A stretch of 64,000 bases of DNA from Hemiscyllium ocellatum. Taxonomy: Eukaryota. The first letter of the stretch is position 1. Each line of letters starts with the position of its first letter. The stretch spans positions 10,599,883-10,663,882 of the forward strand of contig NC_083450.1 of the NCBI RefSeq assembly GCF_020745735.1, read 5' to 3'. The notes beneath the pieces were generated by a model. That model had not been told where the DNA came from, did not search any database, and saw only the letters and a list, made by a program, of their open reading frames with translations. This document shows, piece after piece, positions 14,488-62,849 of the stretch. Position numbers and translations under genes: made by a program.

Positions 14488-14619
14488 NNNNNNNNNNNNN
14501 NNNNNNNNNNNNNNNNNNNNNNNNNNNNNNNNNNNNNNNNNNNNNNNNNNNNNNNNNNNNNNNNNNNNNNNNNNNNNNNNNNNNNNNNNNNNNNNNNNNN
14601 NNNNNNNNNNNNNNNNNNN
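14488..14619. other. Assembly gap (132 N)
   Basis: Run of n bases. Confidence 1.
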
Positions 14620-17824: not shown

Positions 17825-17832
17825 AATATTTG

Positions 17833-20670: not shown

Positions 20671-22200
20671 CAATCCGTGGCGTCCTTGGGAGCCTCATAG
20701 CAGGGGACAATTTTCTTCTCCAATGCCCAGGTTGGCCACATTCAAAACAAGTGTCCGGTGGCTAACCTCTGACTCCTCCACGGCCCCTTCCTCTACCACT
20801 CATTCCTCCTGGAACACCTCTTGGCCTGCCCTCCTAAAAGGGGGTAGTATGGCATCGAATCAGGTGCCGGGTCTCGACTCTGCCGGTTATTTTGTGGCAA
20901 CGGCTGCTGCACCATCTGATTAGTCGTCTTTTGGGAGGTCTTCTTTGTCTCATTAACCTTCCGTCTAGCCTCATCAAGCTGTAACTTCAGCAACTGCACT
21001 TGTGCTGACCCATTGCTCTGTTTACCTTCATTCTCTTTTGTTCTATATCGCTTCATATGATGCATCAAATGTTTTTCCCACTGTTCTGTAGAATACCCTG
21101 TGATATCAGGATTACTCTCCCGTACCTCTTTTACTTCCTTAGGCATCCCTGCCATAACGGCATTTCTAAACTACGTGGTCTGTAGCTGACCTGACCCTGG
21201 CTGGCTCCCCGCAGTATCTGTCCACGTTCCTTTACATCTAGCCAAAAAGGCAAGCATCTTCTCGCCCTCCTTCATTGTGAAGGTGAGCGGGTGCATCGCT
21301 CCCGGTGGAATCGGGAATCTATCCCTCATAGCCCTTCCCACACAGTAGACATGCTGCGCAAACGGGTCCGAGTCAGGTACTAAGGTGGTCCCCGCAGACA
21401 CTTCAATCTGCTGTACCTCCCACATACTCAATTGTTTGCCCACGAATGCTCTCCAATCACCCATGGCCAACTTGAAGCCTAGTGTGTGTTGGCAAAATTT
21501 AGTCATCCAGGGTCCACCTCCCTCCATGGGTGGGGACATTTTATCCAAAATACAATTCATATCCGTATAGGTAAAGGGCTGATACACATCCCTCATAAAA
21601 GAGCCTTTATAATCTAGAGGCAGTTGGTGCTGATATTTTATGGGCAGCCACAATATCTCCCTCCGTCACAAATCATAACTGTTTTCAACCGGAGGCTGTA
21701 CCCCTGATGAGCCCTGTTCAGTATGCATGGTAAGTGAGCCTTTTAAAATGACAGGGTACGTGTTTGGACCGCCCCCTGGGCTGGACTCCTCGTCTTCACT
21801 ATCTGTGCTACTCCTTGACTCCTCCTCTCTTCTTTCTCTTCGGCTTCTTTTGTCCATTTTCTTCCAACCAGTATTGACCCTTTGTTTCCCTTCACATGCT
21901 CTTCTACTTCTCATCTAACCTACTCTTCTGCTTTTCCGAAAGACGGTGACAATTTCTTCCTCTCCTCTTCTTCAGGGACTTTGTCCTGCTTTTATAAATC
22001 TTCCCATCTTTCTGCAGCACTGTTTTTTGTTTGTTCTTTGCAAGCCCACTAATTAACTGACTTCTAACTTTACCCCACTGCTGTTTTACAGACAACACTA
22101 AATCAGAAGAACATCCTCCGTTTTCTTCACACTCTTTATCAAATTCCCTATCATTTTATGTATTTCTGCTTTTTTAAAAAAATCCTCCTGTCCAATAACC
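20670..22200 (-). pseudogene. gag: ERV gag, frameshifted
   Basis: CA-like YQPFTYTDMNCILDKMSPPMEGGGPW and zinc knuckle CFECGQPGHWRR at about 20710-20755. The 5' boundary is approximate. Confidence 0.85.
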
Positions 22201-41045: not shown

Positions 41046-44000
41046 ATATGTTCTATAACTTCTTCCAATCCACTTACCCAGTTTCTTCCTAATTGTGGTG
41101 AAATTGACACTTTCCTGTTTAAACAACCTAACCCGAGCGCTACTCTTGTCTTTTTCCATGAATACTCGAAATGTAATGGAGTTATGGTCACTAAGTCCTG
41201 GCTCATTCCCTATCATCAAGTATAGTGTGGTCTCCTCTCTGAATGGATTCTGAAGATATGTCTGAAAAACCCTCCTTTTTGCATCTAAAAAATTGCTCTT
41301 CACCTGAGTCTCCGACTCTAAGAACATCCAGATCAATAAGGAAAGTTGAAGTAACCAACCATAACTATACTTCATTTTTCACACTCTGGCTCAGCAGTTC
41401 TGGAAACATTTGTGAAGAGGAATCAGAGTTCCTTAGAACCTAGGAAGGGTCACCATACCCGAAGCATAAACTGTGATTTCTCCTAATTGATAATGATCCA
41501 TTCATTTACAATTCCGGTAAATCTTACTTCAGCGAAATTTGAAACTGCAGGTGTTAATCTCAATTGAGTACTTAGTACATGAGATACTTCTGTGAACTGA
41601 ATTGAATGTTTTGAAAGATGGCTGATTTAATAAAAGTCGTATGTGGGGAAATGATTTGATAGTTTCAATTGGACGATGCATCCCAATAAAAGCAAACGAT
41701 ATAATCCAAGATATTATGGCATTTTTTTATTCAACAATTATTTAGTTGGTGGAAGCAGTTGATATGTGCAAACACTTTTTTTTTATTGACCATCAGAGCT
41801 TGAAAATAGTTGTGAACTTTTGGGGCCATCATCACACCACTTGCTTTTTGTAATTGATGTTAATTATATAGATTCAATGTTGGACGGTGAAAAAGATGTT
41901 TTCAACAGTAATAATGGACAAGCAAAAATCTTGGAGTTCACAGTTAGGGTGAATATTACAGGTGAATATTATATCGTGCCTGCATATAGTATATTATGGA
42001 CCAGATCAGGTCTCTCCAAATATTTTAAGAAGGTAGCATAGAGCGTAACGTATTCTTCTTTTAAAGTCAAATGTAAAGTGCTTTGTTCCACTGGCATGAT
42101 GATTGGTCAAAATGCTCGACATTAAGCAAAACACAGTTTATTCAAACATCGCAATTAAAATATAAACAAAAGAAAGAAAAACTTTGGATAGCTTAATTTT
42201 ATTGGAAATCTTAGCCAAACAATAGATATAGTAGCAATTATTAATTAATTGTTCTAATATAGTGCCGTGTCATAAATACACCCTTTGGCAACAAACGAAA
42301 ATTCATAAAAATACGTCTGTCTCACAGGTAACCCAGCAGCAGAGAGAAACCTCAGTTGCTAGACGTAACGACAAGAGGTTAGATAGCTTTGTCTTCTTCA
42401 AGCCCACAACAACAACTAATGAAAGCTAAAGAAAAACTAGAAAAAGAGGATTGGAGATCATTTTCGTGAAAATAAGCCAACCCATTTCAACTCTTCAAAC
42501 TTAAAAAAAAGTTTAAGAAAGTTTAAGAGCCAGTCAAGCTCTTTACTTGACCGGCTTTGGTAGACTGCTCGAACCTTAGGATTTGTCTTCAAAATAACCA
42601 GGACTAAGTAACCTCTCAATGCCACAGCATCATGATAATTAACAGAGAGGATAAAATGCATGCGAATCTTTAAAGCAAAAAAAAAAACAATTTTAAAGGA
42701 AGTTACAAAGAAGCAATGAAAGCCTTTGCCATCCAACAAATAAATGAAAAGTCCAGTGGTCTGCATCTGTCTCAATAACGTTTTGTAATCGCAAGTTTGA
42801 ATTTGAACAAATAGTGAATAACTTCCCCATCAGATTCAAGTTCTGATTTGTAAATTGCACGTGAAATTGAGTCACAAGTGTTGAATGCTTGGAAGAAACT
42901 TTGAAGTGAGCAACAGCACAGAAAATGCTTTGTGTAAGGGAATGCAATAGTTGTTCTCAGACGTACGTTTAGGACCAGAACTAAGTGGTCTGCTTCGTTC
43001 TGAATGATGTAACTGCAAAAGTCAGATTGCGGCACTTGTTGATATAAACACCAAAGCTGAGTGTCATTAAGGGGAGGAGGAGGGAACATTGTAATAATCT
43101 TGAATTGGTTTGCACCAGCCCAGCTGTCACAGTGAAGCTTCTCAAAACAGTAAATATGGAATAGATTATAGCTGAGAAAATTCTCACTATTAGCTTTACT
43201 TTAATGATGATAGATCAAGGTTAAAAATGTTACCCAGACATTTAATGCGTGTCAATGAGACTTTGTTGGTGTCAGTGTGAAAATGCATTAAACCACAATT
43301 CATATTCTCATATATTCCTCAGTCTACCATTCTCCTCAAGCAAACATTTTACGGTTATTCCATGCAGAACTGTAATTTGCATAACATCATTACGTGTATG
43401 CCACATTTTAAAAACATTCATAAGTGAGTACATACTGCCTGATATCCCCCGATATAACCGATTCGAAAAATTAATTCTGCTTCATTCTCCAAAGATGTTA
43501 TTGGACCGGTTGTGTTTATGCGTAAGAAAATCGGTTGATTAACATGGGATTCAATATTTTAAATGCACTCCTCTATCACCATGTAAAGGCAGCAGGGTAT
43601 CGAAAGCATATACAGATATCTTTCACCAAGGTCATAAAAAAAACCACTCGCAATTTCTACCCATTAACAGAACAAAAGCTGAGAGGCACAAGAAATTTGG
43701 TGCCTCAGTCCAAGCTTCTGTTCGCAATAACCTGGAAATATACTGTTATTCTTCCCACTACCGTCAGTTTAACACTCAATGCATTCAACATACGCTTTAA
43801 TGTCACTTTGACAGCATCTTCATCACAAAATCTACAGCACATATAAGAAACATGGGCTCACTTTCTGATTAGGCATTTTGGATTATTAATAAATGGTTGT
43901 CTTACCAGCAAAAGTTAAAGAATCTAATAACACAAAACAAAACCTTTCACAGTAGTGGCTGAATCTTTTCTATTTTGATCATTCCAGCTTCAAAGTGGTA

Positions 44001-44247
44001 AGTCATTAATGGCAATTGTGTACTGTATTGGTCAGAGGCAATGAAATCTTCTGGAGGGAGTATGGATTCATGCTTCAGGTTTCACTGTGTCAGTCGTTCT
44101 TCTAAATTAAAGTTGCATTTCCGAGCAAATGGACACAGCAGAGATTCGAGAAATGGCTTCTTCACTTATGAGTGTAAAGCGTGTCTCACTGAAGTGCAAT
44201 GTCAGAAATCAAATTGCATGTGCTTCAATTCATGATTATTCGTCCTA

Positions 44248-44292
44248 TCAAAGTATTGGATCTTCAGTAAAAGCCAAGTGAGCATAAAGAGT
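44248..44292 (-). CDS. Candidate terminal exon TLYAHLAFTEDPIL*
   Basis: Acceptor ttttgatttattcctcag, phase 0 matching the preceding exon, and an ITIM/ITSM-like tyrosine motif. Confidence 0.6.
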   Translation of the reverse strand, partial: TLYAHLAFTEDPIL

Positions 44293-47200
44293 CTGAGGAA
44301 TAAATCAAAAACGGTTATTATCTGAGAAATAAATGAACAGTGCGCAGCAACAGCACAATCCCATCTTATAACCCTTCAGCTGGAATTATCTGGATCTCAG
44401 TGTAGCCGTTGTGATTTCCAATTAATCCCAACAGATAAAAAGAAACGGATGAGTATTTTCCAGATATCTAAGCCGCTCAATGTGTCATCTCTGTTCTCAT
44501 GCATGAGCTCATTTTAAGCCTTTTTACCTCTTGACACAAACCCAGAACAGAGCAAATGATTCTCACTTCTATCCAATGACATGTTTTAAACAAACTAATC
44601 ATTGCAGCTGGATCATGCCATTGTTCTTCCATACATGATCTCGATATCTGTATTGGCTGTTGTCAGAATACAATTTCTTTTTATCCTGCAGTCTTTGCAT
44701 AAAATATGCATATTGTAATTATATATAACTGCTGATATTAAATATTAAAATGCCCCTTTTCATTTGCTTTCATTGAGAACATAGAACACAGAACATTACA
44801 GCACAGTACAGTCCCCTTGAACTTTGATGCTGCACTCATCTGCAAAACGTTTCTGAAGTCCACCTAACCTACGCTATTCCATTTTCATCCACATGACTAT
44901 CCAATGAACATTGAAATGCCAATAAAGATGGCGAGTTTACTACTGTTGCAGGAAATATATTCCATGCCTCTGAATATATAAACTAACTCTGACATCTGCC
45001 GTATATCTGTGAACCAACAATTTAAATCTCTGCGCCGTCATGCTAGCCATTACCATGTGAGGAAAATAGCTCTCACTGTCCATCCTGTCTTACCCTCTCA
45101 TTATTTTATACGTCTCAATTAGTCACCTCTCAACCTTCTTCTCTCCACCGAAAACAGCTTCAAATCCCTCAGTCTTTTATCGTAAGAACCTTTCTTTGTA
45201 CTAGACAACAGCTGAGTAAATCTCCTCTGAAACCTTTCTGAAGCTTTCACATCCTTCCTATAATGAGGCGACCAGAATTGTCCACAATACTCCAAATGCT
45301 GCCGCATCAGAGTTTTACACAGCTGCAGTATGAACTCATGGTTCTATAACCCAATCCTCTACTAATAAAGGCTAACACACTGTATGCCTTCTTAACAATC
45401 CTATCAATCTGGGTTGCAACTTTCAGGGACATGGACTCCGAGGTCTCTCTTGTCTCCTACATTACCACGAATCTTACAATTAGTCCAGTACTCTGCACGC
45501 CTTTTGCTCCTTCCAATGTGAATCACCTCACACTTTTCTGCACTAACCTCCATTTGCCGCATCTCGGCCCTGCTCTTCAGATTATTTATGTCCCTTTGTA
45601 AAATGATAAGTAGTGCCATCTTGCATTGATTATAATTCTATCACCATAATCGTTTCTGTCAAAAGTTCCATAAAACTAGTGTAATGATTGTACACATTTT
45701 GATGAGAAAACGAAAATCAATTTTCATGCACTTACCTCTTGTTTTGCAACACGTGATCGAAATTCTGATCTCTCATTGGTGTTCCAGTTGCCTGATGTAA
45801 CGAAATCAGTTAGATCATTTAAAAATTACATTACACTTACAGTGTGGAAACAGGCCCTTCAGCCCAACAAGTCCACACCAACCCACCGAAGCGCAAACCA
45901 CCCATACCCCTACATAACACTACAGGCAATTTAGCATGGCCAATTCACCTAACTCACACATCTTTGGACTGTGGGAGGAAACCGGAGCACCCGGAGGAAA
46001 CCCACGCAGACACGGGGAGAACATGCAAACTCCGCACAGTCAGTCGCCTGAGTCGGGAATTGAACCCGGGTCTCAGGCGCTGTGAGGCAGCAGTGCTAAC
46101 CACTGTGCCACCGTGCCGCTCACTAATTAGGTTCCTTAAGGTAAGAATAGAAGAACACAAGAACACGAATAATTTGTTGCATTAAAAGACACATCCTACC
46201 TAAGTCACAATTTCTGTAGCGGTATCCCATGAAAACTGTAAGCATCACGACAAGGACAAGCATCGCCATTATAGCCCCAGGAAACATCAAAAGGCAAGTG
46301 ATGAGTGGTGGTTCTAAGGAAAACAGAGATACAGCTAAAATGCATATTAACAAACAGCTCAGGAGACGCATCAATGCAAAAATAGCTGGCGATTCTGGCT
46401 CGATTGTGCAACTCATAATTGTCCTGAATTAAATTAAATCGAAGACAGACTGAAACATGGAGAGAGAGAAAAGGAAGGAGAGGCATGCCTTTAAAGAAAC
46501 AATCACAGAATCATAGATTCATACAGATGTGCAGCACTAAAGAGGCTGTACTTTCCAACTTGTCCATGCTATCCATACACCCACATTAATCCAGTCTTAT
46601 TTTGCTAGCATCTGACCCATATCCTTCTAATCGTTGCTATTCATATAACCCTCATGATGGCTTTTAGGTATTGTAATTGTAACAGCGTCCACCACTTCCT
46701 CGGGTAACTCATTCCATATACCCACGATCCTCTGCATAAATAAGGTACCTCTCAGTCCCTTTAAAACTTATCCGCTCTCAACTTAAACCTTTGCCCCCTA
46801 CTTTGGAGAAACGACCTTGGGTCTTCACTCGCCACATGTCCTTCATTATTTTATAAACTTCTAAAAGATCACCTCTCTACCTCGGACTCTCCAGGCAACA
46901 TCAACCCCAACCTATTAATACTTTCCCTATACTCTTCAAACACGGAAACTTCCTTGCAAATCTTTTCTGAACTTTTTAAAGTTTTGCACAGCCTTCATTC
47001 ATCAGAGAGATCAGAATAGAAGGGAGTAGCCAAAGGTGGCCTAAGCAATGTTGTGTACAGCTGCAATATTATTTTCAATTACTAGACGCAGTGTACAAAC
47101 TAACAAGTAGATCAAACGCCTTCTTTACAATTCTCTCTATGCACGATTCTCCTTTTCAGTAGTTGTGAACCTGCACTTCAACGTTCTTTGTTCAGCAACA

Positions 47201-50200
47201 CTCCCAGGACCTTACCATTAACTGTATAAGTCCTTCCCTGTTTTGCCTACAAAAACGCAGCACGTCAACTTAATCTAAATTGAACTCCACCTGCCACTCC
47301 TTATCCCATTGGCCCATCTGACCAAGGTCCAATTGTGCATTGAGTTAACCTTCTTGGTTGTCCACCACACCAACAACTTTGGTGACATCTAAACATCTCC
47401 TAATCATGCCTCCTATGTTAGCATCCAAATAATTTACCTAAATGGAAAACAAAAAGCAGGGGACACAGCGCCAATCCTTGTGGCACACCGATGGTCACAG
47501 GCTTTCATTTCAAAAATCAACAGTCCACCACGAGACTCTCTTTTCTACATTCAGGCCAACTATGCTTCCAAATGTCTAACTCTCACTGCATTCCTTGTGA
47601 TCTAATCTTGCTAACCAGTCTACCGTGTGGAACCTTGGAAAGAATCTTACTGATGTCCAGATAGATCATGTCCCCCACATCGCCTTCATCAATCCTCTTC
47701 ATCACTTGTTGAGAAAAACACAATCAAATTAGTGAAAAAGTGATTTCTCCTGTATGAAGACAGGGGACAATCCTTTGTTGACAATATCTAATCATTCCTT
47801 GCCATTCGAAATACAGGTAAATCCTAATCTTCAGATCCCCTCCAATAACTTGACTGCTACTGATGTCAGGCTCGCGGACCTGTGGTTTCCAAACTTTTCC
47901 TTACTGGCTTTCATAAATATTGTCACCACATTAGGTAACCTCCAGTCATCTGGTATCTCACTGGTGTCCAGTTCATAGAACAATATAACTTCGCAAGTAT
48001 CATCCTGATTGGCAGAATCTACATTTGCAAATTTCTATAAATTACTCTATTAACGCAAAATCTAAACGTCTGTTTGTACCTCTCTACATCTGTTTATCTG
48101 TTCCAATAAACAGCTACTTTTCTCGTTTCTGTTGTACATCGTTTCATCCATATTACCAGTTTTATATTTTCAGTAGCATACAATAATTTGTGTCTATTGA
48201 GAAGGGTGAAGATGTTGAAGTGTGAAAATATTGATGTGTGAGTCACAAATTTATTGAATTACATAATGATCATATCACCTTTCATCATTTAACTATTAAA
48301 GTGTTCGCTTAGAAATACTAGCTGAAACATTTTTGACATCAGTTCCATAAATAATTACATCCCTCACAATCAGTCCTCGCTCCAATTTTTAACTTTTCAT
48401 CACTTGAATGGCGATTTGAAGTCAAAATCTTTATCCAAAACCCATTTGGCTTTCCACAACTATATTCAACTAAATAATCCTTCATTATCTCTGTTGGATG
48501 AAATATTCAGTGGACTATTTTTGTTTCTAGTTACAGGTGCTTGGCGCTACGTGGAAAAACATCCAAAATATGTAAATTCACACAGTCTGGTAAGGACGAA
48601 AGAGAATGATAAAAGTTTACATCAGCAAACACAGAGTTGCAAAGCAAAATAACAAGTGATAGCTTATGCCAAACGAATATTGATTTACTCAAACTTGAAG
48701 CATGATGGATTGATATGTTGCTTAAGTGCAAATGGGTATACATGCAGTGGTGAACATTCAAGAAAATGATTTACTGCAATGAGATGATAAGATAATGTTT
48801 GTACCAATTAAAATAATTGAGAAACCTATGTTTTTGTAATTGCTCTGAAAGGAACTCGGCTTGTGAAATAATTTGATAGGATAGTATTGGACAACATCTT
48901 TTGACGTGGACATAAAGCACTCAGATTTCTTAAATACTCGTGGGAGAAAGAGACATAAAGACAGCCAAATATTGTGATAGCTTCATCAAAATAAATATTT
49001 TGGAAGATCCTTGAATGAGCATTTAAATAAATGTTAATTTCGTTTTAATCACTGATTGTTTTAAGCTACATTATGTATTTCTGTGATATGAATGCTATGA
49101 AACACAGAGGATAAATCAGAAATATTATTAGAGAACATAGGGATCTCGAATTAGATAATTATTTTTCCATTTTAATCAGAAGACGGTCAGACCATACATC
49201 TATCCCTGCTATATAAAAATGATCTACTTCAACGGATTCGCATAATCATTCCGTAAGTTAAATTTCGACTGAGTTATCTGAAGCAGGTAATTGTTTGAAA
49301 ATTCATACATTGATGCAAAGGAAGGGAGCACCGTTAATGGATAAAAGCACGTATTATTAACAATAAGATCTAATATTCATATTAACCTGAAAGATCAACT
49401 GTGATGTTCAATATTTACCTCTCTGATCTAAGAGCTTTTCACTGACAAGACTTGCAGTTGAGTTGATTTGAACTGAGCATGTACAGACTGTACCATATTT
49501 CCACGCTTCTGCTGGAACTCTGATATGACTTATGATACTGTATCCCGTGGCAGAGTTCATTGTCACAAAATCTGACCAACCCTTAGCATCCCAAGTGGAT
49601 ATATTCCATTCGATGACAGCAGTATCAGATATCACGTTGCTCACTAAACACATCAATGGGACAAATTCCAAAGAAAACATTTCATCCAGCGGTGTAAACA
49701 AAACAATTATTTCGGGTCGGCCTGATGATTTTGGGAGATAACATAAAAATATGAGTTAACGTTGTTGATTATTGATCGTGAAATCTGTAAGTCTGTAGCT
49801 ATTCTTACCTGTTATGAGGACTTTTGATCCATTTCCGAATACTAATGGGTTAAGGTACGATTTCTTATTGGAGCAGTAATATAGACCAGAATCATTTCTC
49901 TGGATATTGCGAATCACAAGCGAATACTCAGTTGATTTGCTGTTCACTTCTCCAGAAAATCTTCCATCTGGAGGTAAGTGCTTGCCCACTGTGTAAACGA
50001 ATTGCAAACGTTCTCGCAGCTGTTGTTTATACCATAGAACGGCATCATATGTCAACTGACCCGTGTGACAATGCAATTTAATTGTATTTCCAATTGAGAC
50101 CATCTGACGCGCTGGCATCTGCAGGAACGTTTTCTGAGGGACAGTAACTATGAAAACAGAGTGTATTATAAACAATTCTGATGAGCTTCAAAAAATTGTG

Positions 50201-50754
50201 TGCTTAGCGCAGGTTTAATGTATGAAGTTTGGAAAGCATCATTTTTCCGGAATGACTATAAATCAAAATAACGAATTACTTTAATTGATAATTGAGAAAC
50301 TTGTATCAATAGGAGGAGAAAGAAATTTAAAAAAAACGAAGGAACGATAGAAGGAACCTATACAAGAAATGAAATTACTTATAACTACGGTCATAAATTC
50401 AAAGTGGAAAAAATAAGTGTGCACAGAGGGGAAGAGGATGATCTGACAAATAGCAATTCTATAATTAACGTAATTACTGTTTCCATCACTTTGATGGAAG
50501 ACTGAATACTGACCCAGCGCTGTAAATTGACTTTTCACCTGGTTTCTCTTTTACAACCCACGAAATATGCTAAAACTGTTTAATTTACAGACATTAGATT
50601 GTAGATTTCTTCGTCACAACAAATAATTCAGCACTTAAGATTTCTCTTGACCAAATTTCCCTTCATCCTTCACCAGAAGTACACTGAAATTATAAAGAAA
50701 GTCAGTCAAACCTGCCAAAATCTGAAGCAGCGTGCAGAGAGGTAAGATATTCAT
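44248..50754 (-). CDS. Non-rearranging VJ-C1-TM-CYT immunoglobulin-superfamily receptor, 299 aa; join(50754..50712,50147..49809,49721..49419,46313..46200,45791..45736,44292..44248)
   Basis: Six exons, all with GT-AG introns and phases 1,1,1,1,0, give 900 nt of open frame. Domains: leader MNILPLCTLLQILA, V (LHC, WYKQ, DSGLYYC, FGNGSKV), C1 (LMCLV, EW, YSIISHIRV..W..CTC), TM, and a tail with TLYAHL. Core exons are high confidence; the leader and last exon are less certain. Confidence 0.85.
44780..45600 (-). mobile_element. Intronic CR1 3' end
   Basis: LEYCGQFWSPHYRKDV..FSVERRRLRGD peptide and a CR1 tail (gaacatagaacacagaac). Confidence 0.9.
45736..45791 (-). CDS. Cytoplasmic exon GNWNTNERSEFRSRVAKQE
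   Basis: Acceptor tttcgttacatcag, consensus donor GAG|gtaagt, phase 1 to 0. Confidence 0.75.
45826..46120 (-). mobile_element. Full-length HE1/V-SINE-type SINE in the TM-cytoplasmic intron
   Basis: tRNA-like head with A box TGGCACAGTGG and B box GGTTCAATTCC, conserved core, (tgtaa)n tail. Confidence 0.95.
46200..46313 (-). CDS. Transmembrane exon EPPLITCLLMFPGAIMAMLVLVVMLTVFMGYRYRNCDL
   Basis: Acceptor tctctgttttccttag, donor TAG|gtagga, phase 1 to 1. Hydrophobic span is followed by the basic stop-transfer RYR. Confidence 0.85.
46500..47980 (-). mobile_element. Intronic decayed CR1 LINE
   Basis: Reverse-oriented CR1 RT and 3' sequence with the tail at about 46505 (cacagaatcatagattcatacag). 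Confidence 0.8.
49419..49721 (-). CDS. Ig C1-set domain exon
   Basis: GRPEIIVLFTP..VPLMCLVSNV..IEWNIS..GYSIISHIRVPAEAWKYGTVCTCSVQ, with catcag acceptor, GAG|gtaaat donor, phase 1 to 1. Confidence 0.95.
49809..50147 (-). CDS. Germline-joined V-J Ig domain exon
   Basis: Canonical B-strand Cys, C-strand Trp and DxGxYxC, then CDR3-like SNKKSYLNPLV and the J motif FGNGSKVLIT in one exon. Acceptor ttttcatag, donor CAG|gtaaga. Confidence 0.97.
50712..50754 (-). CDS. Leader (signal peptide) exon MNILPLCTLLQILA
   Basis: 43-nt ATG exon ending in phase 1 at CAG|gtttga, the typical Ig/TCR leader size, 564 nt upstream of the V exon. Confidence 0.7.
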
Positions 50755-54018: not shown

Positions 54019-54343
54019 GTGGGCGGCATGGTGGCACAGTGGTTAGCACTGCTGCCTCACAGCGCCTGTAGACCCGGGTTCAATTCCCGACTCAGGCGAC
54101 TGACTGTGTGGAGTTTGCACGTTCTCCCTGTGTCTGCGTGGGTTTCCTCCGGTTGCTCCGGTTTCCTCCCACAGTCCCAAAGATGTGCGGGTCAGGTGAA
54201 TTGGCCAAGCTAAATTGCCCGTAGTGTTAGGTAAGGGGTAAATGTAGGGGTATGGGTGGGTTGCGCTTCGGCGGGTCGGTGTGGACTTGTTGGGCCGAAG
54301 GGCCTGTTTCCACACTGTAAGTCTAATCTAATCTAATCTAATC
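54019..54343 (+). mobile_element. Full-length HE1/V-SINE-type SINE
   Basis: A box 54032-54042, B box 54077-54087, core, and (ctaat)n tail. Confidence 0.95.
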
Positions 54344-54868
54344 CTGTCCATATCCCTGGTATTCTTTGGCAAATCAGTCGGGTTTTCTTGCTGATTTCTC
54401 TGCTTCAAAGAAAGCAATAAAAGCCTATCCAGACTTTTTTCATAGCTAAGTTGCTCTAATGCAGACTACGTCCTGATGAATGAAGTCTCCATTCCCTCCA
54501 GGTCAAATATATCCTCATTACGCTTACATTTCGAGAAAGTTGATGTACAGCTGCACTATTGCGAGTGCTCCTGACGAGGTACAGTGAACAGTTTCAGAGG
54601 GTGGGTTATGTGAGAAGAATAATTTAAAATAGGAAATTATTCTAATTGTAAGGGAGGCAAATGAAATTTCATGTTGGGTCCTGTACTGATCAGAACCAAG
54701 TGGATCCTATTTATTACAACACACTTGATTCGATCTGTTAACCCCAACCAATTAGGAAGGCCAGCTGACCAATATAGAGAAGCAATTATAAAGGTTAAAA
54801 AAAAAGAAAAAAAAAGAGAATAAAAACAGGAATGCTAGAGTTTCTGCCCACTCGAAAAAAATACAAAG

Positions 54869-57800
54869 CAATTCAGGTTCAGGTAGCTGGCAGTGAAGGG
54901 GGTCATTATGACCGATTGCCTGCCCTGCTTCGGTGGGTGCGTTCGAGTCTGGGTGTCTCTGCAGAAGTGGCACACGTTGCCCACCAACACCCTAGAACTA
55001 TTCAGGGAGAGGTGGGCTCCCCAGGGAGTGGAGTGCATTATTTCCCCCTCCAAATCTATTTTGATTTAATCCCTGCCCTCCACTTCACTGTTTGATCACG
55101 CAGCATTGTCCTTTGATGTGAAGGGGACTGCTTTTCACAGGCCACTTGTGTGTTTCCTTTCTTTCTGGTGGTGGAAATTGAAAATGGATTCGTGCATCTT
55201 GTGTCTTCCACTGTGTCTCACACCTGCACTCACACAACATGGGTGCTCTGGAAAGGGGTAAAAAAGGAAAGAAAATGAATAGGATTGTGAAGTAAACAAA
55301 AAAAAATAAGCAATTCAGCTCCACGCAACGGGAAATGAAGAGGATCATTATGGCTAATTGCCTGCCCCACTTCGGTGGGTGCGTTCGAGTCCGGGTGTCT
55401 CTACAGAAGGGGCCCACGATGCCCACCAACACCCTTGAGCTGTTCAGGGAGAGATGGGTGCCCCAGGGAGTGGAGTGCATTATTTCCCCCTCCAAATCTA
55501 TTTTAATTTATTCCATGCCCTCCCCTTCACTGTTTAATCACGCAGCATTGCCCTTTAATGTGAAGGGCACTGCTTGTTACTGGCCAGTTGGGTGTTTCGA
55601 TTAAATATTTGTACACTTTGTGTCTTTATTGTGTCTCACACCTGCATACATACACAACATGGGTGCTGGGGAAAAATAAGCACTACCCCAATTATACAAT
55701 AATGTGGAGGTAATTAAATGAAAACAATAAACAGCGTCAGACTGCACACAGACATTAAAAATAGAAAAAGGAAGAGGTTGAACAAGGAAAAAAAAGGATG
55801 GTGAAATAAACAAAAAAAGACAAGCAACTCAGGTCCAGGCAACGGGCAGTGTAGAGGGTCATTATGCCCACTCGTCTGCCCCGCTTAAGTGGGTACGTTC
55901 GGGGCTGGGTGTCTCTGCAGAAGGGGCACACTGTGCCCACCAGCACCCTTGAGCTGTTCAGGAAGAGGTGGGAACCACAGGGAGTGGAGTGCATTACTTC
56001 CCCCTCCAAATCTATTTTGATGTAACGCCTGTCCTGCCTTTTACTGCTTGATGACGCAGCATTGCCTTTTGATGTGAAGGGCTCTGCTTGTCACTGGCCA
56101 CACGTGTGCTTCCTTTCTTCCTGGTGCTGGAAACCGAATAAAGATTCGTGCATCTTTGTCTTTCACTGTGTCTCACACCTGCACGCACACAACATGGGTG
56201 CTGCCGAAAAAAAATAATAAGCACGACCGCAATTGTTGGGGTAATAAGAAAAATAGACGAGCAATTCCGGTCCAGGCAGCGGGCAGTGAAGAAGGTCTTC
56301 AGAGCTGATTTCCTGCCCCGCTTCGGTGGGTGCGTTCGAGCCCGAGTGTCTCTGCAGGATAGGCACACGTTGCCCACCAACACCAGTGAGCTGTTCAGGG
56401 AGAGATGGGCACTGTAGGAAATGGAGTGCATTACTTCACCCTCCAACTCTGTTTTGATTTAATGCCGGCCCCCCCTTCACTGTTTGAATCCACAGCATTG
56501 CCCTTTGCTGTGAAGGGCACTGCTTGTCACTGGCCATTCGCGTTTTGGTTTCTTTCTGGTGGTTAGAATTGACTAAAGATTTCTACACCTTGTATCTTTC
56601 ACTGTGTCTCACACCTGAACACACACAACATGGGTGCTGGTGGAGAAAAAAAGAAAACAAAAAGCAAAAAATAAACAGGAGACTCAACATGGACGCTGGG
56701 GAAAATATAAGAAAACAAAAGTGTCAGACCTTCTGTTCACTCTAAGAAAAAAAAAGGTTGGCAATTCAGATCCAGGCAGCGGGCGGTAAGGAGGGTCATT
56801 ATGATTTCCTGTGCCACTTCAGTTGGCACGTTCGAGCCTGAGTGTCTCTGGAGAAGGGGCACGCAGTGTCAATCAACAATCTTGTGCTGTTCAGGTAGAG
56901 GAAGGCACCGCTGGGAGTGGAGTGTATTATTCCCCCGTCCAAGTCTATTTTGATTTATTCCCTGCCCTCCCCTTCACTGTTTGATCACGCAGCATTGCAG
57001 TCTAAGAAGGGCAGTACTCGTCACAGGCCACTCGAGTGTTTCCTTTCTTCCTGGTGTTAGAAACTGAGTAAAGATTCGTGTACCTTGTGTCTTTCACTGC
57101 GTCGCTGGGGCAAGTTAAATAAGCACTACCATAGTTAGGTGGTGGGGGGTGGGCGGGTGGAAGAAAAAAGAAATTTTAAGAAAGACAATCAATTCTGGTC
57201 CAAGAAGTGAAGAGGAACATTATGGATGATTTCCTGCAGCACTTCGGTGGTTATTTCAGAGCCCAGGTGTCCCTACAGAAGGAGTATGTGGTGTCTACCA
57301 ACTCCTTTTAGCCGTTCGTGGTGAGGTGGGCACAGCAGGGAGTGGAGTATTTTATTTCCCGCTCCAAATCTATTTTAATTTAATCCCTGCCCTCCCTTTC
57401 AATTTTTGGTCATGCACACTGCCTTTTGCTGTGTAGTGCATTTTTTTGTCATTAGCCAATAGGGTGTTTCCTTACTTCCTAGTGGTGGAAATTAAATATA
57501 GATCTGTACACCTGTTATCTTCCATTTTATCTCACACCTGCACACAACCATCATGGGCACGGGTGGGGGGCGGGGGTGTTGATAAGCACTACCGCTTTTA
57601 GGTGGTAGTGTGGGAGTAAAAATAAGAAAAAAAAAGAAAAATATAACCGGGAGATTTACAATCTCCTCAGTTTAGATAACTGACTCCACAGAAAGAAAAA
57701 TAAATATCAGGCGCTTTAGAATCGTGCAGTATTGCCCTTTGATGAGAAGGGAATTGCTTGCCTTGGCCATGCGGGTGTTTCTTATCTTCCTGGTGGTGGA

Positions 57801-58800
57801 ATATAAATAAACTTTTAAATACTTGTTGTTTTCAATATGTCCTTCATCTGCACATGCACGACATGTCTGCTGGGAAGAAATAAGCACTACTGCTGTTAGG
57901 CAGTGGTGTGGAGAAAAAATAGACAGGCAATTCATATCCCAGCAACGGGCCTTGAAATGGGTCGTTACGGCCGATTGCCTGCTACTCTTCCATGGTTCTG
58001 TCAGATCCCAAGTGTCACTGAAGAAGGAGCACGCAGTATCGATCACCTCCCTCGAGCTGTTCATAGAGAAGCGTGCACCACAGGGAGTGGAGTGCTTTAT
58101 TTCTCCTCCATCTCTATTTTGATTTAATCCCTACCCTCCCCTTCGCATTTCTGATCACGCAGCATTGCCCTTTGGTGAGAGGGCATTGTTTGTCACTTTC
58201 TTCCTCGTGGTGGAAATTGGATAAAGATTTGTATATCTGTTGCCTTTCACTGTTCTAACACCTGCACACACACAACTTGGGTGCTGGGGAAAATATAAGC
58301 ACTACTGCTGTTCGGTGGTAGGGTGTGGCAAATGGAAAAGAATATATAAATAAAGGACAGGCAATTCAAGTCGAAACAGTGGGCCACGAGGGGGTCGTTT
58401 TGGCCGATTGCCTGCCCTTCTTCAGTGGTTATGTCAGAACCCGGGTGTCCCTTGAGAAGGAGCACATGGTATCTACCAACTCCTTCGATCTGTTCAAGTA
58501 CAGGTGATCACCACAGTGTAGTATTTTATTTCTCACTTCAACTCTATTTTGAATTAATCCCTGCCCGCCCCTTCACTATTTTTTTGATCATGCAACATTG
58601 CCTTTTGATAAGAAGAGCTTTGCTTGTCACTGGCCACTCTGGTGTTTCCTTTCTTCCTGGTTGTGTAAACTGAATAACAGCTTGTGCATCTTTTGTCTTT
58701 CACTGTGTCTCACACCTGGACACACAACATGGGTGTTGGGAACATATAAGCACTACTGCAGTTGGGCGGTAGCATGGGAGGAAGAAAAAAAATATAACCA
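54869..58800 (+). repeat. Head-to-tail array of Tx1-LINE 3'-end units (about 430-510 bp), starting at 54869, 55311, 55825, 56262, 56762, 57190, 57928 and 58362, plus a partial unit at about 57720
   Basis: Each unit encodes the Tx1 ORF2 C-terminus (RSRQRA..CLP.F.G.VRARVSL..LELFRERW.PQGVECIISPS), then the 3' UTR, a stem-loop and an A-rich tail. Confidence 0.9.
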
Positions 58801-61800
58801 GGAGATTTAAAGTCTTTTAAAAAAAACCAGGATATCAATAATCACGTCAGTTTAGGGGACTGATTATGTGCTGGCTGGTCCACAGTCGGTGTTACCGTTG
58901 CTTTTGGTTTCTGCTTGTTTCTGAGGAGGAGTGTTTTATTTTTCTTTCCCCTTTTTGTAAGGAACACGTTTGCTCTTTTGTTTTCTTTTTTGTTTTGAGT
59001 TGTGTTTGTTTTTTTTCCATTTTGGAGCTGCACTCAGATTAACAAGCGATTACTGCCAACAGTGCTGCTGCTGCAGCCGGTGCCTGCTCCCACTGCTGCC
59101 ACCTGGGTCCTGCCTGCACTGCTGGTGCCTGGGATCCACCTATACCTGGGTGTGTTGCTGCTACTGCCAGAGGCACACCTACAACTGGGCCTGTTGCTGC
59201 CACTGACTGGTCCCACCTACAACTGGGCCTTTTGCTGGTCCTGCCTGGGCCTGTTGCTGCTACCTGGCCCCAACCATACCTGGAGCCTGCCTCCATTGCT
59301 GCTGCCTAGGGCCTGCCTACATCATTGATGTCTGGGACTTGTCTTATCCAACCACCCCAGGTCCTAAGACCACCGCTGCTGCCTGACGCCGTCTTTGCCA
59401 CTACAGCGTAGGGTGTACCTTTAACGCTACTGCCTGGGACTTGCATTGATTCCCTCCCACGGAGCTAAGAACACCACGGTTGCCTAGGTGCTGCCTCCAA
59501 CACTGCTGCCTAGGACTCGCCTGATCCCGAGCCAGACTAAAACATCACTGCTACCCCAGGCACCTGACTTAATGCCTGAGGTCAAGGCTACCAGAACCTG
59601 AACATGACCACCGAGGCTTACAGTAAGGTCATGCTAGTGTGGTCGGGCCACTAGTCATTGTCGCTGCAGCCTCAATGTACAGAAAGGCATTATTTTTCCT
59701 GAAGGCTGAGCAGGCAGTTCACCTAGCCATGGAGAAGGGGTTCACTGTGAGTGGGACATACCTATCTGTCGACCCTTTGGAGGTCATGGCCCAGAGGATC
59801 ATGATCTCCAACGTCCCACACTTTATTGCCAATGAGTTCCTTCTCCCCATCTTCAAACAATGGAGGAAATCCGGTCAGGTGTCCAACCGTTCTTGGTCGG
59901 TCTGAAGGACCCCGCCCAATGACACATATCCTCCTTCTGACGCTAGGTATTCACTTGACTGGCCTGGGAGGAGGTCACAATTGCTCATTTACCCTCGTCC
60001 TCCTACTGCGTCTTCTAGAATATGGACAGCTTGCAGTGCCACTTGTGCCACGAGATGGGATACATCAGAAAGAACTGCCCAACATAGGAAGCTGCCCAGC
60101 CAAGTGCGCAAGCGCCTCTGTGCAGCAACAGCATCACAACGGCGCGGGAAACGTGATCCCCTACACTTCCGATCCTGTGCTTGTACCATGCCACGTTATC
60201 CTCCCCTCACCGGAATATCTTATCCCTTAACTCAGTCTCTGAATCTCACCTCGTGGTATCAATTCCGGGGGAACTATGCCCCCAACTCCATGACTGACAC
60301 ATGTCCCATGGTGAGAACTCCTGTGGAACCTGTACATGTTATACAACCCCACAACACCTGGTCACTGAGCTCTGCTCCAATCAGCTGGAATCTGGGTTGG
60401 ACCTTGGGGACTCAGCTGCTGTTGTTGCTGACTCTCTGGATGCTGGGTAGGAAGTGGTCCTCTTCCCCGCCCCCACCACCTGATATTGCAAGTGTAGGAC
60501 AGGAATTGACACTACAGGCTCCTCCTGCTTTCTTCCAGCCAATAGTGTTCCCGGAGACCCTGGAGGCGGAGTGTCGGGTCCAATGACCACCAAGGTGACC
60601 AGGGACGGGAGGGCCCATAAAGTACCCCCCGTCTCCCTGGGGAAGAGGAGCCACTCCCTGGAGGGGATGCAGAGGGCAGAGCCTTGGCGGCGAGGCTGAC
60701 CAGGGTCGGGGACATGTTGGGTGGCGGGTGTCCAAATTGGATGCTGCCACAGGACATAACAAGCAGGACAGCAGTAGTTGTCCACTGCCATTCGTGTCCA
60801 CTGCCATTCGACGCTGTAGAATGGTGGTGCTCAAACCCGACATAATGCACCAGTTGGAGGATGTTCAGGTGTGCAGTGGAATCCCGTCCGCGTTTTACCT
60901 CGGCCTGGTTGCGTTATCACATTGGCCCCAAGGTCACAGATATCCCGCGGTAGCCTGTGCCCCACACAACCTGACCTGACTCTGGAATTTTACTTTTGTC
61001 TCCTTCAGGGACATATCACGGTGGGCCTTGTACAAATGCTGCTGCACAACAACCACCTCTTTTCTCTCATCCACTACACGGAGACGCCTTGGCATACCCA
61101 TTTGCCACCAGGCAGTGAGGATCCCCAGTGGACGTCTCTCTATGTTGGAGTCCTCCCCCCCTTTCTCTTCGTGATCTGGGTGGAGGATGGTGCACGCAGC
61201 AGTCCCCTGCAACCACAGATTGTAGTGGGTCATGGACTCTCAACCTAACGGCTTGTTCTATGGTGCTGTGGAGACCATGCACCACATATATATGGGGTAC
61301 AGGCATTCTGATTCCCTTTTCAGTTTTCTGGAGAACCTTCTCCTCTGTTGGTGACTGCACTTTTGACCCACGCTCCTGATCTTTGAGCACCTGGTGATGG
61401 GTCACACGATCTCCTAGTGGATCTGCTCCTGGGTCTGGCCAAACTGTCCATAAACAGGTGCAGGCAGTGAGCCGTGGAGGGGTCGTTATGGCCAATTGCT
61501 TTACTCTCATCTGCAGTTATGTAAGAGCCCGGGTGCCCTGGAGAAGGAGCATGTGGTGTATACCAACCGCCTCGAGCTGTTCAGGAGAGGTGGATACCAC
61601 AGGGAGTGCAGTTTTAATTTTCTCTTCCATCTCTATTTAGAATTAATCTCGGCCCTCCCCTTCACCTTTGTTTTCAATCACGCAGCATTGGTCTTTGATG
61701 AGAAGGGTATTGCTTGTCATTGACCATTCAGGTGTTTCCTTTCTTCATGGTGGTAGAAGATACCTGTTGTTCTTCACTACATCTACACACACACATAACA

Positions 61801-61900
61801 TATGTCATGGGAAAAATAAGCACTACCGCAGTTAGTCGGTAATGTGGGGTTAAGAATAACAAAGAAAACAAAAGAAGAAAAGAAACAAAAATCACCATGC
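58800..61900 (+). mobile_element. Long, internally deleted Tx1-clade LINE
   Basis: GC-rich repetitive 5' region, ORF1 (FFLKAEQAVHLAMEKG..ISNVPHF; CHLCHEMGYIRKNC knuckle at about 60040-60078), and ORF2 C-terminus (PQWTSLYVGVLP..LLLGLAKLSINR). No APE or RT core is visible. Confidence 0.85.
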
Positions 61901-62039
61901 GATTTTGAAAAAAAGAATAACAATACCACGAAAGGGACTAGAAAGTTAAAAATCACATAACACCAGGTTATAGTCCAACAGGTTTAATTGGAAGCACACT
62001 AGCTTTCGGAGCGACGCTCCTTCATCAGGTGATTGTGTT

Positions 62040-62340
62040 TCTTCTCCCCAAGGAGAGGTGGGTAGTGCAGGGAGTGGAGAAGGAGCATGCATTGTCTACC
62101 AAGAGCCTTGAGCTTTTCAGGGAGAGGTGCGAACCGTAGTGAGTGGAGTGTTATATTTTCCCGACCAACTTCATTTTGACTTAATCTACCACCACAAAGA
62201 AAGGAAACATCAGAGCGGACACTGATAAACAATGCCCTGTCCCTTCACTTTTTTCATCACGCCACATTGCCCTTTGATTGGAAGGACATTGTTTATTGCT
62301 GGCCAATCTGGTGTTTCCTTTCTTCGTGGTGGTGTTATTT
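62040..62340 (+). repeat. Further partial Tx1 3'-end unit, preceded by a Penelope-associated fragment (about 61944-62036)
   Basis: gagaaggagcatgcattgtctacc..gagtggagtgttatatttt..attgccctttgat homology to the array units. Confidence 0.75.
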
Positions 62341-62849
62341 TGTTTGCTCCATGCAATAAGCTTTAGAGGACTTGACTGACTGTGAGATTTCTTAACAAGC
62401 AGCCAAATTAAAGATAACGTCTGTTAAATTACACACAAGATATATTGCTAACTTATTCAAACTAATGAGTGGATCTATTAGCTCAAACTACTTTAGGCAT
62501 ATTGTGCATGTCTAACAATGAGTCTCCCTGCCTTTCTCACGTTGGGGGCACAGTTTTACAACGACTTGTCGAGAGAACTATGGTTTCTTGTCGCTGTTCA
62601 TAAAGTGAGTCCAAATTGGAGCCCAACCAGTGCTGCAGACTCCCTGGTAATAATTTTATTCTGAGATCACTCACTTTTACTTCTCCAGATATTCTGTTAT
62701 GCAGAAAATAATCGCCCAGGTGGCTATCTCACTTTGTTCCCAACTGCCAAAATAACAGCCTTGAATTAAACCAGTTTTCCCCAGTGGTCTTCAATTGCTC
62801 GTTGTATTGTTCCATTAACCCTTAAAAATTAATGTTTATGATCTGCTTT

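What the first reader, a model, noticed from the sequence alone, without database searches (positions are those of the whole stretch)
44248..46313. Antigen-receptor-like ectodomain wired to its own ITIM/ITSM-like tail
Seen: the TM has no charged residue, and the roughly 40-aa tail ends ..KQE|TLYAHL, with the tyrosine motif opening the last exon. Established: TCR and BCR chains have short tails and signal through CD3 or CD79, TCR via charged TM residues; ITIM is (I/V/L/S)xYxx(L/V) and ITSM is TxYxx(V/I). Inference: a self-contained inhibitory or switch receptor using a TCR/IgL-like VJ-C1 ectodomain.
Basis: partly seen in the sequence, partly recalled or inferred. Interest (0 to 1): 0.7.

Follow-up and report, generated by a model that had tools for sequence, protein, structure and literature searches.

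The report
Shark antibody-like receptor with brake tail
This is a real, already annotated epaulette-shark gene for a small surface receptor whose outside looks like an antibody light chain and whose tail carries one tyrosine "brake/switch" motif. That tyrosine is unchanged from sharks to reptiles, so this is an ordinary member of an old, poorly named receptor family, not a new kind of receptor.

Summary
On the minus strand, six exons give a 299-aa protein: leader, germline-joined VJ, C1, stalk/TM, and two small cytoplasmic exons. It is identical to RefSeq XP_060676706.1 of Hemiscyllium ocellatum. The TM has no charged residue and the tail is 40 aa. The last exon opens with TLYAHL right after ...KQE.

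Such a motif arises by chance in 7-14% of comparable tails. The evidence is conservation:
- The last exon is 44/45 nt identical to the whale-shark orthologue, against 74-77% in its flanks.
- The tail tyrosine is invariant in 44 family members from sharks to tetrapods, like the Ig-fold cysteines.

Support for splicing is indirect for this gene and direct for a skate homologue, which has a full-length cDNA contig.

The family is multigene in sharks and rays, and is present in coelacanth, lungfish, frog, turtles, crocodilians, squamates and birds. It fits the PRARP family of Fu et al. 2019, but I could not test that against a labelled PRARP sequence.

The most likely function is a self-signalling, probably dimeric, inhibitory or switch receptor that recruits SH2 phosphatases. 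No experiment shows this.

The scan had already noted this stretch and many similar VJ-C1-ITIM genes elsewhere in this genome. Novelty: new member of a known kind.

The parts
50712..50754 (-). Leader exon (ATG at 50754; MNILPLCTLLQILA; phase-1 donor)
   Evidence: The first 14 residues are identical to P0144.
49809..50147 (-). Germline-joined VJ exon (V-set domain running straight into the J strand FGNGSKVLITG, then a splice donor)
   Evidence: Pfam V-set, E 1.3e-14. Best PDB sequence matches are kappa-type VL. There is no RSS at the V-J junction; the only CACAGTG lies at 49993, inside FR2/CDR2 codons.
49419..49721 (-). C1-set constant-type Ig domain exon
   Evidence: Pfam C1-set, E 5e-6. PDB matches are IgH CH3-type domains at 43 bits. 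Family members score 50-88 bits in the exhaustive HMMER search.
46200..46313 (-). Stalk + transmembrane exon (114 nt, phase 1-1). It holds the conserved membrane-proximal Cys235, an uncharged TM and the start of the tail.
   Evidence: Predicted helix at 233-264. C235 is conserved in at least 90% of 44 sequences.
45736..45791 (-). Cytoplasmic exon 1 (GNWNTNERSEFRSRVAKQE; consensus donor GAG|gtaagt)
   Evidence: The whale-shark exon is in the same position, 59 nt long.
44248..44292 (-). Last coding exon: TLYAHLAFTEDPIL + TGA. The motif TLYAHL is at 44275-44292 and the Tyr288 codon at 44284-44286.
   Evidence: It is 44/45 nt identical to whale shark, against 74-77% in the flanking intron and 3'UTR. 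Y288 is invariant and A289 is at least 90% conserved in 44 sequences.
43780..44247 (-). Probable 3'UTR (first ATTAAA at 43801). The extent is inferred.
   Evidence: Poly(A) signal scan. Run X1 holds 0.48 of a test stretch made half of exon+UTR and half of intron.

Best explanation
The stretch is the 3' half of an intact, transcribed, non-rearranging receptor gene (RefSeq XP_060676706.1, auto-named 'immunoglobulin kappa light chain-like').

Shown:
- The protein is a type I membrane protein with leader, germline-joined VJ domain, one C1 domain, a short stalk with a conserved Cys, an uncharged TM and a 40-aa disordered tail.
- Only the end of the tail is conserved, and it sits on its own exon: E-T-L-Y-A-H-L-A-F.

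Inferred:
- After ligand engagement, a Src-family kinase phosphorylates Tyr288.
- The pY-A-x-L site then docks SH2 domains of SHP-1/SHP-2 (possibly SHIP, or SAP-type adaptors because of the Thr at -2).
- The receptor therefore signals on its own and mainly inhibits, without CD3/CD79-type partners.
- It probably sits in the membrane as a disulfide-linked dimer paired through the C1 domains, as a homodimer or with a paralogue.
- The V domain's CDR-like loops differ between germline paralogues, so each gene copy has its own V-domain loops. Ligands are unknown.

The gene belongs to a multigene family of cartilaginous fish with homologues in lobe-finned fish and non-mammalian tetrapods. This is most likely the PRARP family.
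For: Gene model:
- Six exons with canonical splice sites translate exactly to P0144.
- The whale-shark orthologue has the same six exons and phases.
- dN/dS against whale shark is 0.45 overall.

Motif under selection:
- The last exon is 97.8% identical in nucleotides. Its flanks are 74-77% identical and the Ig exons 82-84%.
- Y288 is one of only eight invariant columns in 44 sequences from sharks to tetrapods. The other seven are Ig-fold core residues. A289 (Y+1) and C235 are conserved in at least 90%.
- Entropy is 1.1 bits over the motif and 2.2 bits over the rest of the tail.
- Tails of 30 or more shark and ray paralogues read [ST]xYAxL. Turtles, crocodilians and squamates read T(E/D/Q)YAx(V/L).

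Expression:
- X1 is a 150-million-letter run, too small to be shotgun DNA of a shark genome. It holds 0.78 of V-intron-C1, and 0.48 of a stretch that is half last exon+UTR and half intron. I had expected about 0.47 for that second test before running it. DNA runs hold 1.00.
- A skate homologue has a 1540-nt contig that starts with a SMART template-switch oligo and encodes leader to tail without introns.

Ectodomain and tail fold:
- Pfam V-set and C1-set. Foldseek top hits are Fab light chains and gamma-delta TCR chains at E 1e-14.
- The tail is predicted disordered and the TM helical.

Dimer:
- The homodimer test scored 0.36 against a best control of 0.16. That mark was reached by 21 of 30 solved one-chain pairs and 0 of 23 single chains. 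The runs agree in at least 35% of contacts and the partner pLDDT is at least 72.
- The interface lies on the C1 A/B/D/E strands.

From my own knowledge, not tested here: combinatorial pY-peptide studies gave (V/I/L)XpYAX(L/V) and LXpYAXL as SHP-1 SH2 consensus motifs. That fits the near-invariant Ala at +1.
Against: - No phosphorylation, SH2 binding or inhibitory effect has been measured for any family member I could read about.
- The window's motif meets neither the strict ITIM (-2 is T) nor the strict ITSM (+3 is L) consensus.
- YAHL also fits the YxxPhi sorting signal.
Expression of the last exon rests on word shares without positions.
- The dimer prediction only just reached the mark, and it may reflect the model's memory of Ig constant-domain pairs.
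- A few paralogue models lack the motif (P0140, P0156), and some rays have D at -2.
Confidence: 0.7

Rival explanations
1. The motif acts as an ITSM-type switch, not a plain brake. Thr at -2 lets SAP/EAT-2-type single-SH2 adaptors bind, so the outcome (activation or inhibition) depends on which adaptors the cell expresses, as for SLAM-family receptors and PD-1.
For: T at -2 is the commonest residue in sharks (TLYAHL, TLYADL, TLYARL, TVYADL). In sauropsids the motif is T-E-Y-A-A-V, a strict TxYxxV ITSM.
Against: - Many family members carry S, V, L, I or even D/P at -2, and L at +3. That fits ITIM-type phosphatase SH2 binding better than SAP binding.
- There is only one tyrosine motif.
- No SAP binding data exist.
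Confidence: 0.15
2. The conserved Y-A-x-L is mainly a YxxPhi sorting or endocytosis signal read by AP-2. It controls surface level or recycling and does not recruit SH2 proteins.
For: YAHL, YADL and YARL all fit YxxPhi. The motif lies in a disordered tail 28 residues from the membrane.
Against: Conservation reaches positions that AP-2 mu2 does not read: -2 (T/S/V/L), a near-invariant Ala at +1, and L-A-F at +3 to +5. That pattern is typical of SH2 ligands. The two roles can also coexist.
Confidence: 0.1
3. The tail exon is an annotation artefact, or the gene is a decaying copy. The real product would be a secreted or tail-less protein.
For: - RefSeq models of several paralogues include TM-skipped isoforms (P0006 against P0269; P0155, P0272, P0276).
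- Two paralogue models lack the motif.
- No junction reads were obtained for this gene.
Against: - The ORF is intact with consensus splice sites.
- The last exon is the most conserved part of the gene, and the exon structure is the same in whale shark.
- Even the TM-skipped isoforms keep the tail exons.
- X1's word shares fit a spliced mRNA that includes the last exon.
- A skate cDNA carries the homologous tail.
Confidence: 0.04

Closest known systems
[quoted passage not shown] The paper is cited in PMC10751288 and PRARP is named in PMC11599192; its content is recalled from memory because the paper is not held.
   Same: - Non-rearranging, germline-joined VJ domain with a canonical J motif.
- V-C1 ectodomain in non-avian species, one TM, and a cytoplasmic ITIM-type tyrosine.
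- Reported disulfide-linked homo/heterodimers, matching the conserved Cys235 and the predicted C1-C1 pairing here.
- Absent from mammals.
- The sauropsid, bird and frog homologues found here fit that description. They share with the shark genes the Cys just before the TM, a (L/F)-Y-x-G start to the TM and the C-terminal TxYAx(L/V).
   Different: - As I recall it, PRARP was described in bony vertebrates, not cartilaginous fish.
- The shark genes form a large, order-specific multigene expansion, not a linked pair.
- I could not compare with a sequence labelled PRARP, so membership is probable, not shown.
SIRP-alpha (PTPNS1)
   Same: J-like V domain, C1-set domains, an uncharged TM, and xTYADL-type ITIMs that recruit SHP-1/2. 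It uses the same 'antibody-like outside, phosphatase-recruiting tail' logic. The Atlas feature search lists SIRP clusters at 0.95 (a lead only).
   Different: - SIRP-alpha has V plus two C1 domains and four tail tyrosines. This gene has one C1 and one tyrosine motif.
- SIRP chains do not appear among the best 60 PDB sequence matches of the V exon, the C1 exon or the family profile.
Ig light chains / TCR chains
   Same: V(J)-C1 two-domain ectodomain and the same exon logic (leader split in phase 1, V, C). Best sequence and fold matches. The predicted C1-C1 pairing is on the same sheet used by CL-CH1 and C-alpha-C-beta.
   Different: - There is no RSS and V and J share one exon, so no rearrangement.
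- There is no charged TM residue for CD3 assembly.
- The gene has its own conserved tyrosine tail.
UrIg / UrIg2 of elasmobranchs (PMC12227049; PDB 9dmx)
   Same: Non-rearranging VJ + C1 genes of sharks, discussed as relics of the pre-RAG antigen receptor.
   Different: - UrIg2 has nine C1-type domains, is expressed in liver and gill rather than lymphocytes, and has no ITIM mentioned in the paper.
- The window's C1 matches 9dmx only weakly, at 28.7 bits.
Teleost NITRs, and PD-1/BTLA-type ITSM receptors (from my own knowledge)
   Same: NITRs have VJ-type V domains with ITIM tails, in germline multigene families. PD-1 and BTLA carry TEYA(T/S)I, nearly the sauropsid form (TEYAAV) of this family's motif.
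   Different: NITRs lack a C1 domain and are teleost-specific. PD-1 and BTLA have a single V or I domain and no C1, and are CD28-family members.

Membership tests
ITIM (strict consensus) | (I/V/L/S)-x-Y-x-x-(I/V/L) in the cytoplasmic tail | tested here: not met
   The window copy reads T-L-Y-A-H-L, and T at -2 is outside the strict set. Paralogues and orthologues with S, V, L or I at -2 (SVYARL, ILYAQL, VIYASL, LTYSAI) do meet it.
ITSM (strict consensus) | T-x-Y-x-x-(V/I) | tested here: not met
   The window copy has L at +3. Turtle and crocodilian homologues (TEYAAV) meet it, while TEYATL forms do not.
ITIM/ITSM receptors (functional class) | Type I receptor, uncharged TM, tyrosine motif conserved in the tail | tested here: met
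   No K/R/D/E in the TM. Y288 is invariant and A289 at least 90% conserved in 44 sequences. The last exon is 44/45 nt identical to whale shark.
ITIM/ITSM receptors (functional class) | Tyrosine phosphorylation and binding of SHP-1/SHP-2/SHIP/SAP | not testable with these tools
   Needs phosphopeptide binding and cell assays.
Rearranging antigen receptor chain (Ig/TCR) | V and J in separate segments flanked by RSS | tested here: not met
   One exon, 50147-49809, runs through YYC...FGNGSKVLITG to a splice donor. The only heptamer, CACAGTG, is at 49993 in FR2/CDR2 codons.
Rearranging antigen receptor chain (Ig/TCR) | Charged TM residues (TCR) or a short tail that needs CD3/CD79 | tested here: not met
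   Uncharged TM and a 40-aa tail with its own conserved motif.
PRARP | Non-rearranging VJ exon with a canonical J motif | tested here: met
   FGNGSKVLITG is encoded in the V exon. FGNGS is conserved across the family.
PRARP | V-C1 ectodomain (non-avian), TM, cytoplasmic ITIM-type tyrosine | tested here: met
   Pfam V-set and C1-set, and the tail motif.
PRARP | Sequence homology to chicken PRARP1/2 | tested here: inconclusive
   - No sequence labelled PRARP could be obtained, and Fu et al. 2019 is not held.
- A shark member (P0017) hits turtle V-C1-TM-TEYAAV genes at E 1e-19.
- Those turtle genes extend to crocodilians, squamates, birds and a frog, but not mammals. That is the reported PRARP range.
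- The bird members lack a C1-set Pfam hit, as I recall being reported for avian PRARP.
PRARP | Disulfide-linked homo- or heterodimers | tested here: inconclusive
   Cys235, just before the TM, is conserved in at least 90%. The homodimer prediction scored 0.36 against a best control of 0.16, a marginal pass that may come from the model's memory of Ig C-domain pairs.
SIRP | V + two C1 domains and several tail ITIMs | tested here: not met
   One C1 exon and one motif. No further Ig exon lies between 49419 and 46313 by tblastn or ORF scan. SIRP is not among the top PDB matches.
UrIg/UrIg2 | VJ followed by three or more C1-type domains | tested here: not met
   A single C1, with only a weak match to 9dmx at 28.7 bits.

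The most novel reading that the evidence does not exclude
This family may preserve the signalling logic of the pre-RAG antigen-receptor ancestor: a germline-diversified, C1-paired dimeric VJ-C1 receptor that signalled through its own tail tyrosine before Ig/TCR chains handed signalling to CD3/CD79. The tyrosine has been invariant since the shark-tetrapod split, and the family is absent only in mammals. That would make it an ancient checkpoint-type receptor system, with paralogue-specific V-domain loops and still unknown ligands.
Probability: 0.12. Interest if true: 0.75.

Novelty: new member of a known kind. Interest (0 to 1): 0.35.

Why it matters
The gene itself is ordinary: it is annotated, conserved and one of many copies. 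Two points have some value.

- The family is probably PRARP, which as I recall was described in bony vertebrates. Here it clearly exists as an expanded multigene family in sharks and rays. That places a VJ-C1 receptor with an autonomous tyrosine tail at the base of jawed vertebrates.
- The tail tyrosine is as invariant as the Ig-fold cysteines over the roughly 450 million years since sharks and tetrapods split. That singles out one residue (Y288) and one short peptide for a direct test of what these antigen-receptor look-alikes do.

Databases label the members inconsistently (kappa-like, gamma-1 heavy-chain-like, Mem5-like, lachesin-like, TCR-like). A common name would keep them from being mistaken for Ig or TCR genes in shark immunogenomics.

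Tried and rejected
I have no junction reads.
  - My local scripts did read the whole window file as a passive target for protein queries and ORF listing. The ORF listing also printed the start of a translation that runs across those places.
- The look-up of encoding contigs found only the genome contig for P0144, with no transcript contig.
- Fu et al. 2019, Ohta et al. 2019 and Flajnik et al. 2023 are not held.
- Word searches for PRARP gave only two passing mentions.

Sequence checks that came back negative:
- tblastn of 15 family proteins against the window found no second family gene or stray Ig exon.
- The ILYCDL reading frame at 413-488 exists but has no Ig exon to go with it in this window.

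Readings I considered and rejected:
- ITAM: there is only one tail tyrosine motif.
- hemITAM: there is no DEDG-type acidic patch, and this is a type I protein.
- Class I PDZ ligand: the C-termini end -P-I-L, -P-T-L or -Q-T-F, with no S/T at -2.
- RSS at the V-J junction: none.
- Activating partner with a charged TM: none among 44 aligned members.
- SIRP membership: not supported.

Weak support:
- The homodimer prediction passed only marginally, at 0.36 against a best control of 0.16. I use it as weak support only.
Full report
**What is there.** The window is vertebrate DNA at about 40% GC, full of retroelement debris. A six-exon gene lies on the minus strand between 50754 and 44248:
- leader, 50754-50712
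- a V exon, 50147-49809, that runs without interruption through YYC...FGNGSKVLITG to a splice donor
- a C1 exon, 49721-49419
- a stalk/TM exon, 46313-46200
- a 56-nt cytoplasmic exon, 45791-45736, ending ...AKQE with a consensus GAG|gtaagt donor
- a 45-nt last coding exon, 44292-44248, reading TLYAHLAFTEDPIL-stop behind a good polypyrimidine/AG acceptor

All introns are GT-AG, and the first four introns all interrupt a codon in phase 1, as in Ig/TCR genes. The 900-nt CDS translates letter for letter to P0144, which is NCBI XP_060676706.1, 'immunoglobulin kappa light chain-like' of Hemiscyllium ocellatum. The annotated gene span of 6507 nt equals 44248-50754.

**Is it more than chance?** The motif alone is not. 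[ILVST]xYxx[ILV] appears in 7% of shuffles of this tail and in 14% of random 40-mers of family composition. Conservation is what carries the weight.
- Orthogroup. The orthologues in Chiloscyllium plagiosum, C. punctatum and Rhincodon typus form a 100/99-supported group with the window gene. All end in ETLYAHLAFTEDPIL.
- Whale shark locus. In L002 I recovered the same six exons, of 43/339/303/114/59/45 nt and with the same phases.
- Nucleotide identity. The last exon is 44/45 nt identical. That compares with 74-77% for the 200 nt of intron and 3'UTR on either side, and 82-84% for the Ig exons. Overall dN/dS is 0.45.
- Family alignment. In 44 family members from sharks, rays, coelacanth, lungfish, a frog, turtles, alligators and squamates, only eight columns are invariant. 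Seven are Ig-fold core residues: the V-domain disulfide cysteines, the D-x-G-x-Y-x-C run, and the first Cys and the Trp of C1. The eighth is the tail tyrosine, Y288. The Ala at +1 and the membrane-proximal Cys235 are conserved in at least 90%.
- Entropy. Among the shark and ray members, entropy is 1.1 bits over the motif and 2.2 bits over the rest of the tail. The CDR-like loops of the V domain (2.0-2.2 bits) vary more than the frameworks (0.95-1.5 bits).

**Is the exon used?** I could not get junction reads. I worked beside those places afterwards. Indirect evidence comes from three sources.
- Run X1. This run holds 150 million letters, far too few for shotgun DNA of a shark genome to cover a given locus, so it is almost certainly RNA.
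  - It holds 0.78 of the sampled words of V-intron-C1. About 0.84 is expected if the 87-nt intron is spliced out.
  - I then asked for a 500-nt stretch made half of last exon plus 3'UTR and half of upstream intron, expecting about 0.47 for a spliced mRNA. X1 holds 0.48, while the genomic runs hold 1.00.
  - These shares carry no positions, so they fit the gene model but do not prove it.
- Skate cDNA. A little-skate homologue (P0165, an allele of XP_055487220.1) is encoded without introns, from leader to tail (ESVYAGL), on a 1540-nt Logan contig. The contig begins with the 3' part of the SMART template-switch oligo, so it is a full-length cDNA.
- Independent models. The RefSeq models of many species were built separately and use the homologous terminal exon.

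**What the protein looks like.** Pfam finds V-set (1.3e-14) and C1-set (5e-6).
- By sequence, the V domain is closest to kappa-type VL and the C1 to IgH CH3-type domains. The family profile aligns over V plus C1 with Ig chains.
- An AlphaFold2 model built on the family alignment has mean pLDDT 72. The V domain is confident (85-94) and the C1 fair. There is a TM helix at 233-264 and a disordered tail.
- The best Foldseek matches cover both domains. They are Fab light chains, with gamma-delta TCR chains close behind, at E about 1e-14.
- There is no RSS at the V-J junction and no charged TM residue in any aligned member. It is antigen-receptor-like in shape, but it does not rearrange and cannot use the CD3-type assembly rule.
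- A homodimer test of residues 16-238 scored 0.36 against a best control of 0.16.
  - That mark was reached by 21 of 30 proteins solved as one-chain pairs and 0 of 23 solved as single chains.
  - The runs agree in at least 35% of contacts, and the partner pLDDT is at least 72.
  - The interface is on the A/B/D/E strands of C1, the face used by CL-CH1, CH3-CH3 and TCR C domains.
  - This is a marginal pass that may be recalled from Ig structures.
  - Together with the conserved Cys235 just outside the membrane, it makes a disulfide-linked dimer likely, either a homodimer or one with a paralogue.

**The family.** An exhaustive HMMER search with the C1 exon, and word-indexed searches with a catshark member, the window protein and a turtle member, show three things.
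- Sharks and rays carry a multigene family. It is found in Hemiscyllium, Chiloscyllium, Rhincodon, Stegostoma, Scyliorhinus, Mustelus, Cetorhinus, Carcharodon, Heterodontus, Pristiophorus, Leucoraja, Mobula, Hypanus and Pristis. Several paralogues sit on one contig per species, and the expansions are order-specific.
- Sharks and rays also have a second subfamily with a degenerate J strand. It groups with the lungfish and coelacanth genes.
- A tetrapod branch occurs in turtles, crocodilians, squamates, birds and a frog. No mammal appeared.

The branches share features that Ig and TCR lack: the Cys immediately before the TM, a (L/F)-Y-x-G start to the TM, and a C-terminal [T/S/V/L]-x-Y-A-x-[L/V]. 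That motif reads TEYAAV or TEYATL in sauropsids and LTYSAI in lungfish. All database names are automatic and inconsistent: kappa-like, lambda-like, gamma-1 heavy chain-like, Mem5-like, lachesin-like and TCR-like.

**Comparison with what is known.** This description fits the PRARP genes of Fu et al. 2019 (J Immunol 202:1992). That paper is cited in PMC10751288, and PRARP is listed among VJ-type IgSF genes in PMC11599192.
- From memory of its abstract, PRARP genes are non-rearranging VJ genes with a V-C1 structure. The C1 is degenerate in birds.
- They have a TM and a potential ITIM, and form monomers and disulfide-linked homo/heterodimers.
- They are expressed in chicken B and T cells, and have orthologues in bony fish, amphibians, reptiles and birds.
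- The paper is not held, and I had no labelled PRARP sequence. Membership is therefore probable but untested on the homology criterion.
- SIRP-alpha is the closest well-studied functional analogue, but it has two C1 domains and four tyrosines, and it is not among the best sequence matches.
- UrIg and UrIg2 are much longer, and the UrIg2 paper mentions no ITIM.
- NITRs lack C1 (from my own knowledge).

**Mechanism.**
- Shown: the architecture, the invariance of Y288, a near-invariant Ala at +1, a hydrophobic residue at +3, a predicted disordered tail, and an uncharged TM.
- Inferred: Src-family phosphorylation of Y288 creates a docking site for SH2 phosphatases. From my own knowledge, pY-peptide library work gave (V/I/L)XpYAX(L/V) and LXpYAXL as SHP-1 SH2 motifs, which fits the conserved Y-A-x-L.
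- Thr at -2 leaves room for SAP-type adaptors, which is the switch reading.
- The window's own motif is a hybrid that meets neither strict consensus.
- A YxxPhi sorting role cannot be excluded and may coexist. However, the conservation at -2, +1 and +5 argues for an SH2 ligand.

**Verdict.** The gene is an annotated, conserved member of an old family whose logic has, as I recall it, been described (PRARP). The scan itself had already noted this stretch and many similar VJ-C1-ITIM genes in this genome. Interest is modest. The useful additions are the probable extension of the PRARP family to cartilaginous fish, as an expanded gene family, and the residue-level evidence that the tail tyrosine is under strong constraint.

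Noticed in passing
window 46200-46313 (TM exon); paralogue proteins P0006 vs P0269, P0155 vs P0267, P0272, P0276, P0139: The TM exon is 114 nt and phase 1-1, so skipping it keeps the frame. RefSeq isoform models of several paralogues are exactly such TM-skipped forms: soluble V-C1 proteins that still end in the tyrosine-motif tail.
   Followed up: partly
window ~15870-21665, minus strand: A run of long open frames that look retroviral or retrotransposon-like. They include an integrase-like and RT-like pol region and an env-TM-like stretch with a CC...F motif. This is probably an endogenous retroelement. I only saw it in the ORF listing.
   Followed up: no
window ~45840-46170 (intron between the TM exon and cytoplasmic exon 1) and ~54019-54330: Two copies of a SINE-like repeat in opposite orientation, with similar conceptual translations.
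   Followed up: no
window 413-488, minus strand: An open frame reads ...THILYCDLYISGK..., an ITIM-like I-L-Y-C-D-L that another reader noted. tblastn with 15 family proteins found no Ig exon elsewhere in the window that could belong to it.
   Followed up: partly
window 54800-62400: Tandem-looking repeats of a LINE/Tx1-like 3' region, with many similar ORFs such as ...LEGE(I/V)MHSTPWG.HLSLNSSRVLVG.... Another reader had already noted them.
   Followed up: no
window 14488-14619: An assembly gap of 132 N. I left it as it is.
   Followed up: no
L002 (whale shark NC_063377.1, 4941381-4967014): The whale-shark orthologue occupies 5.6 kb with the same exon sizes. No second family gene lies within 10 kb on either side.
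   Followed up: partly
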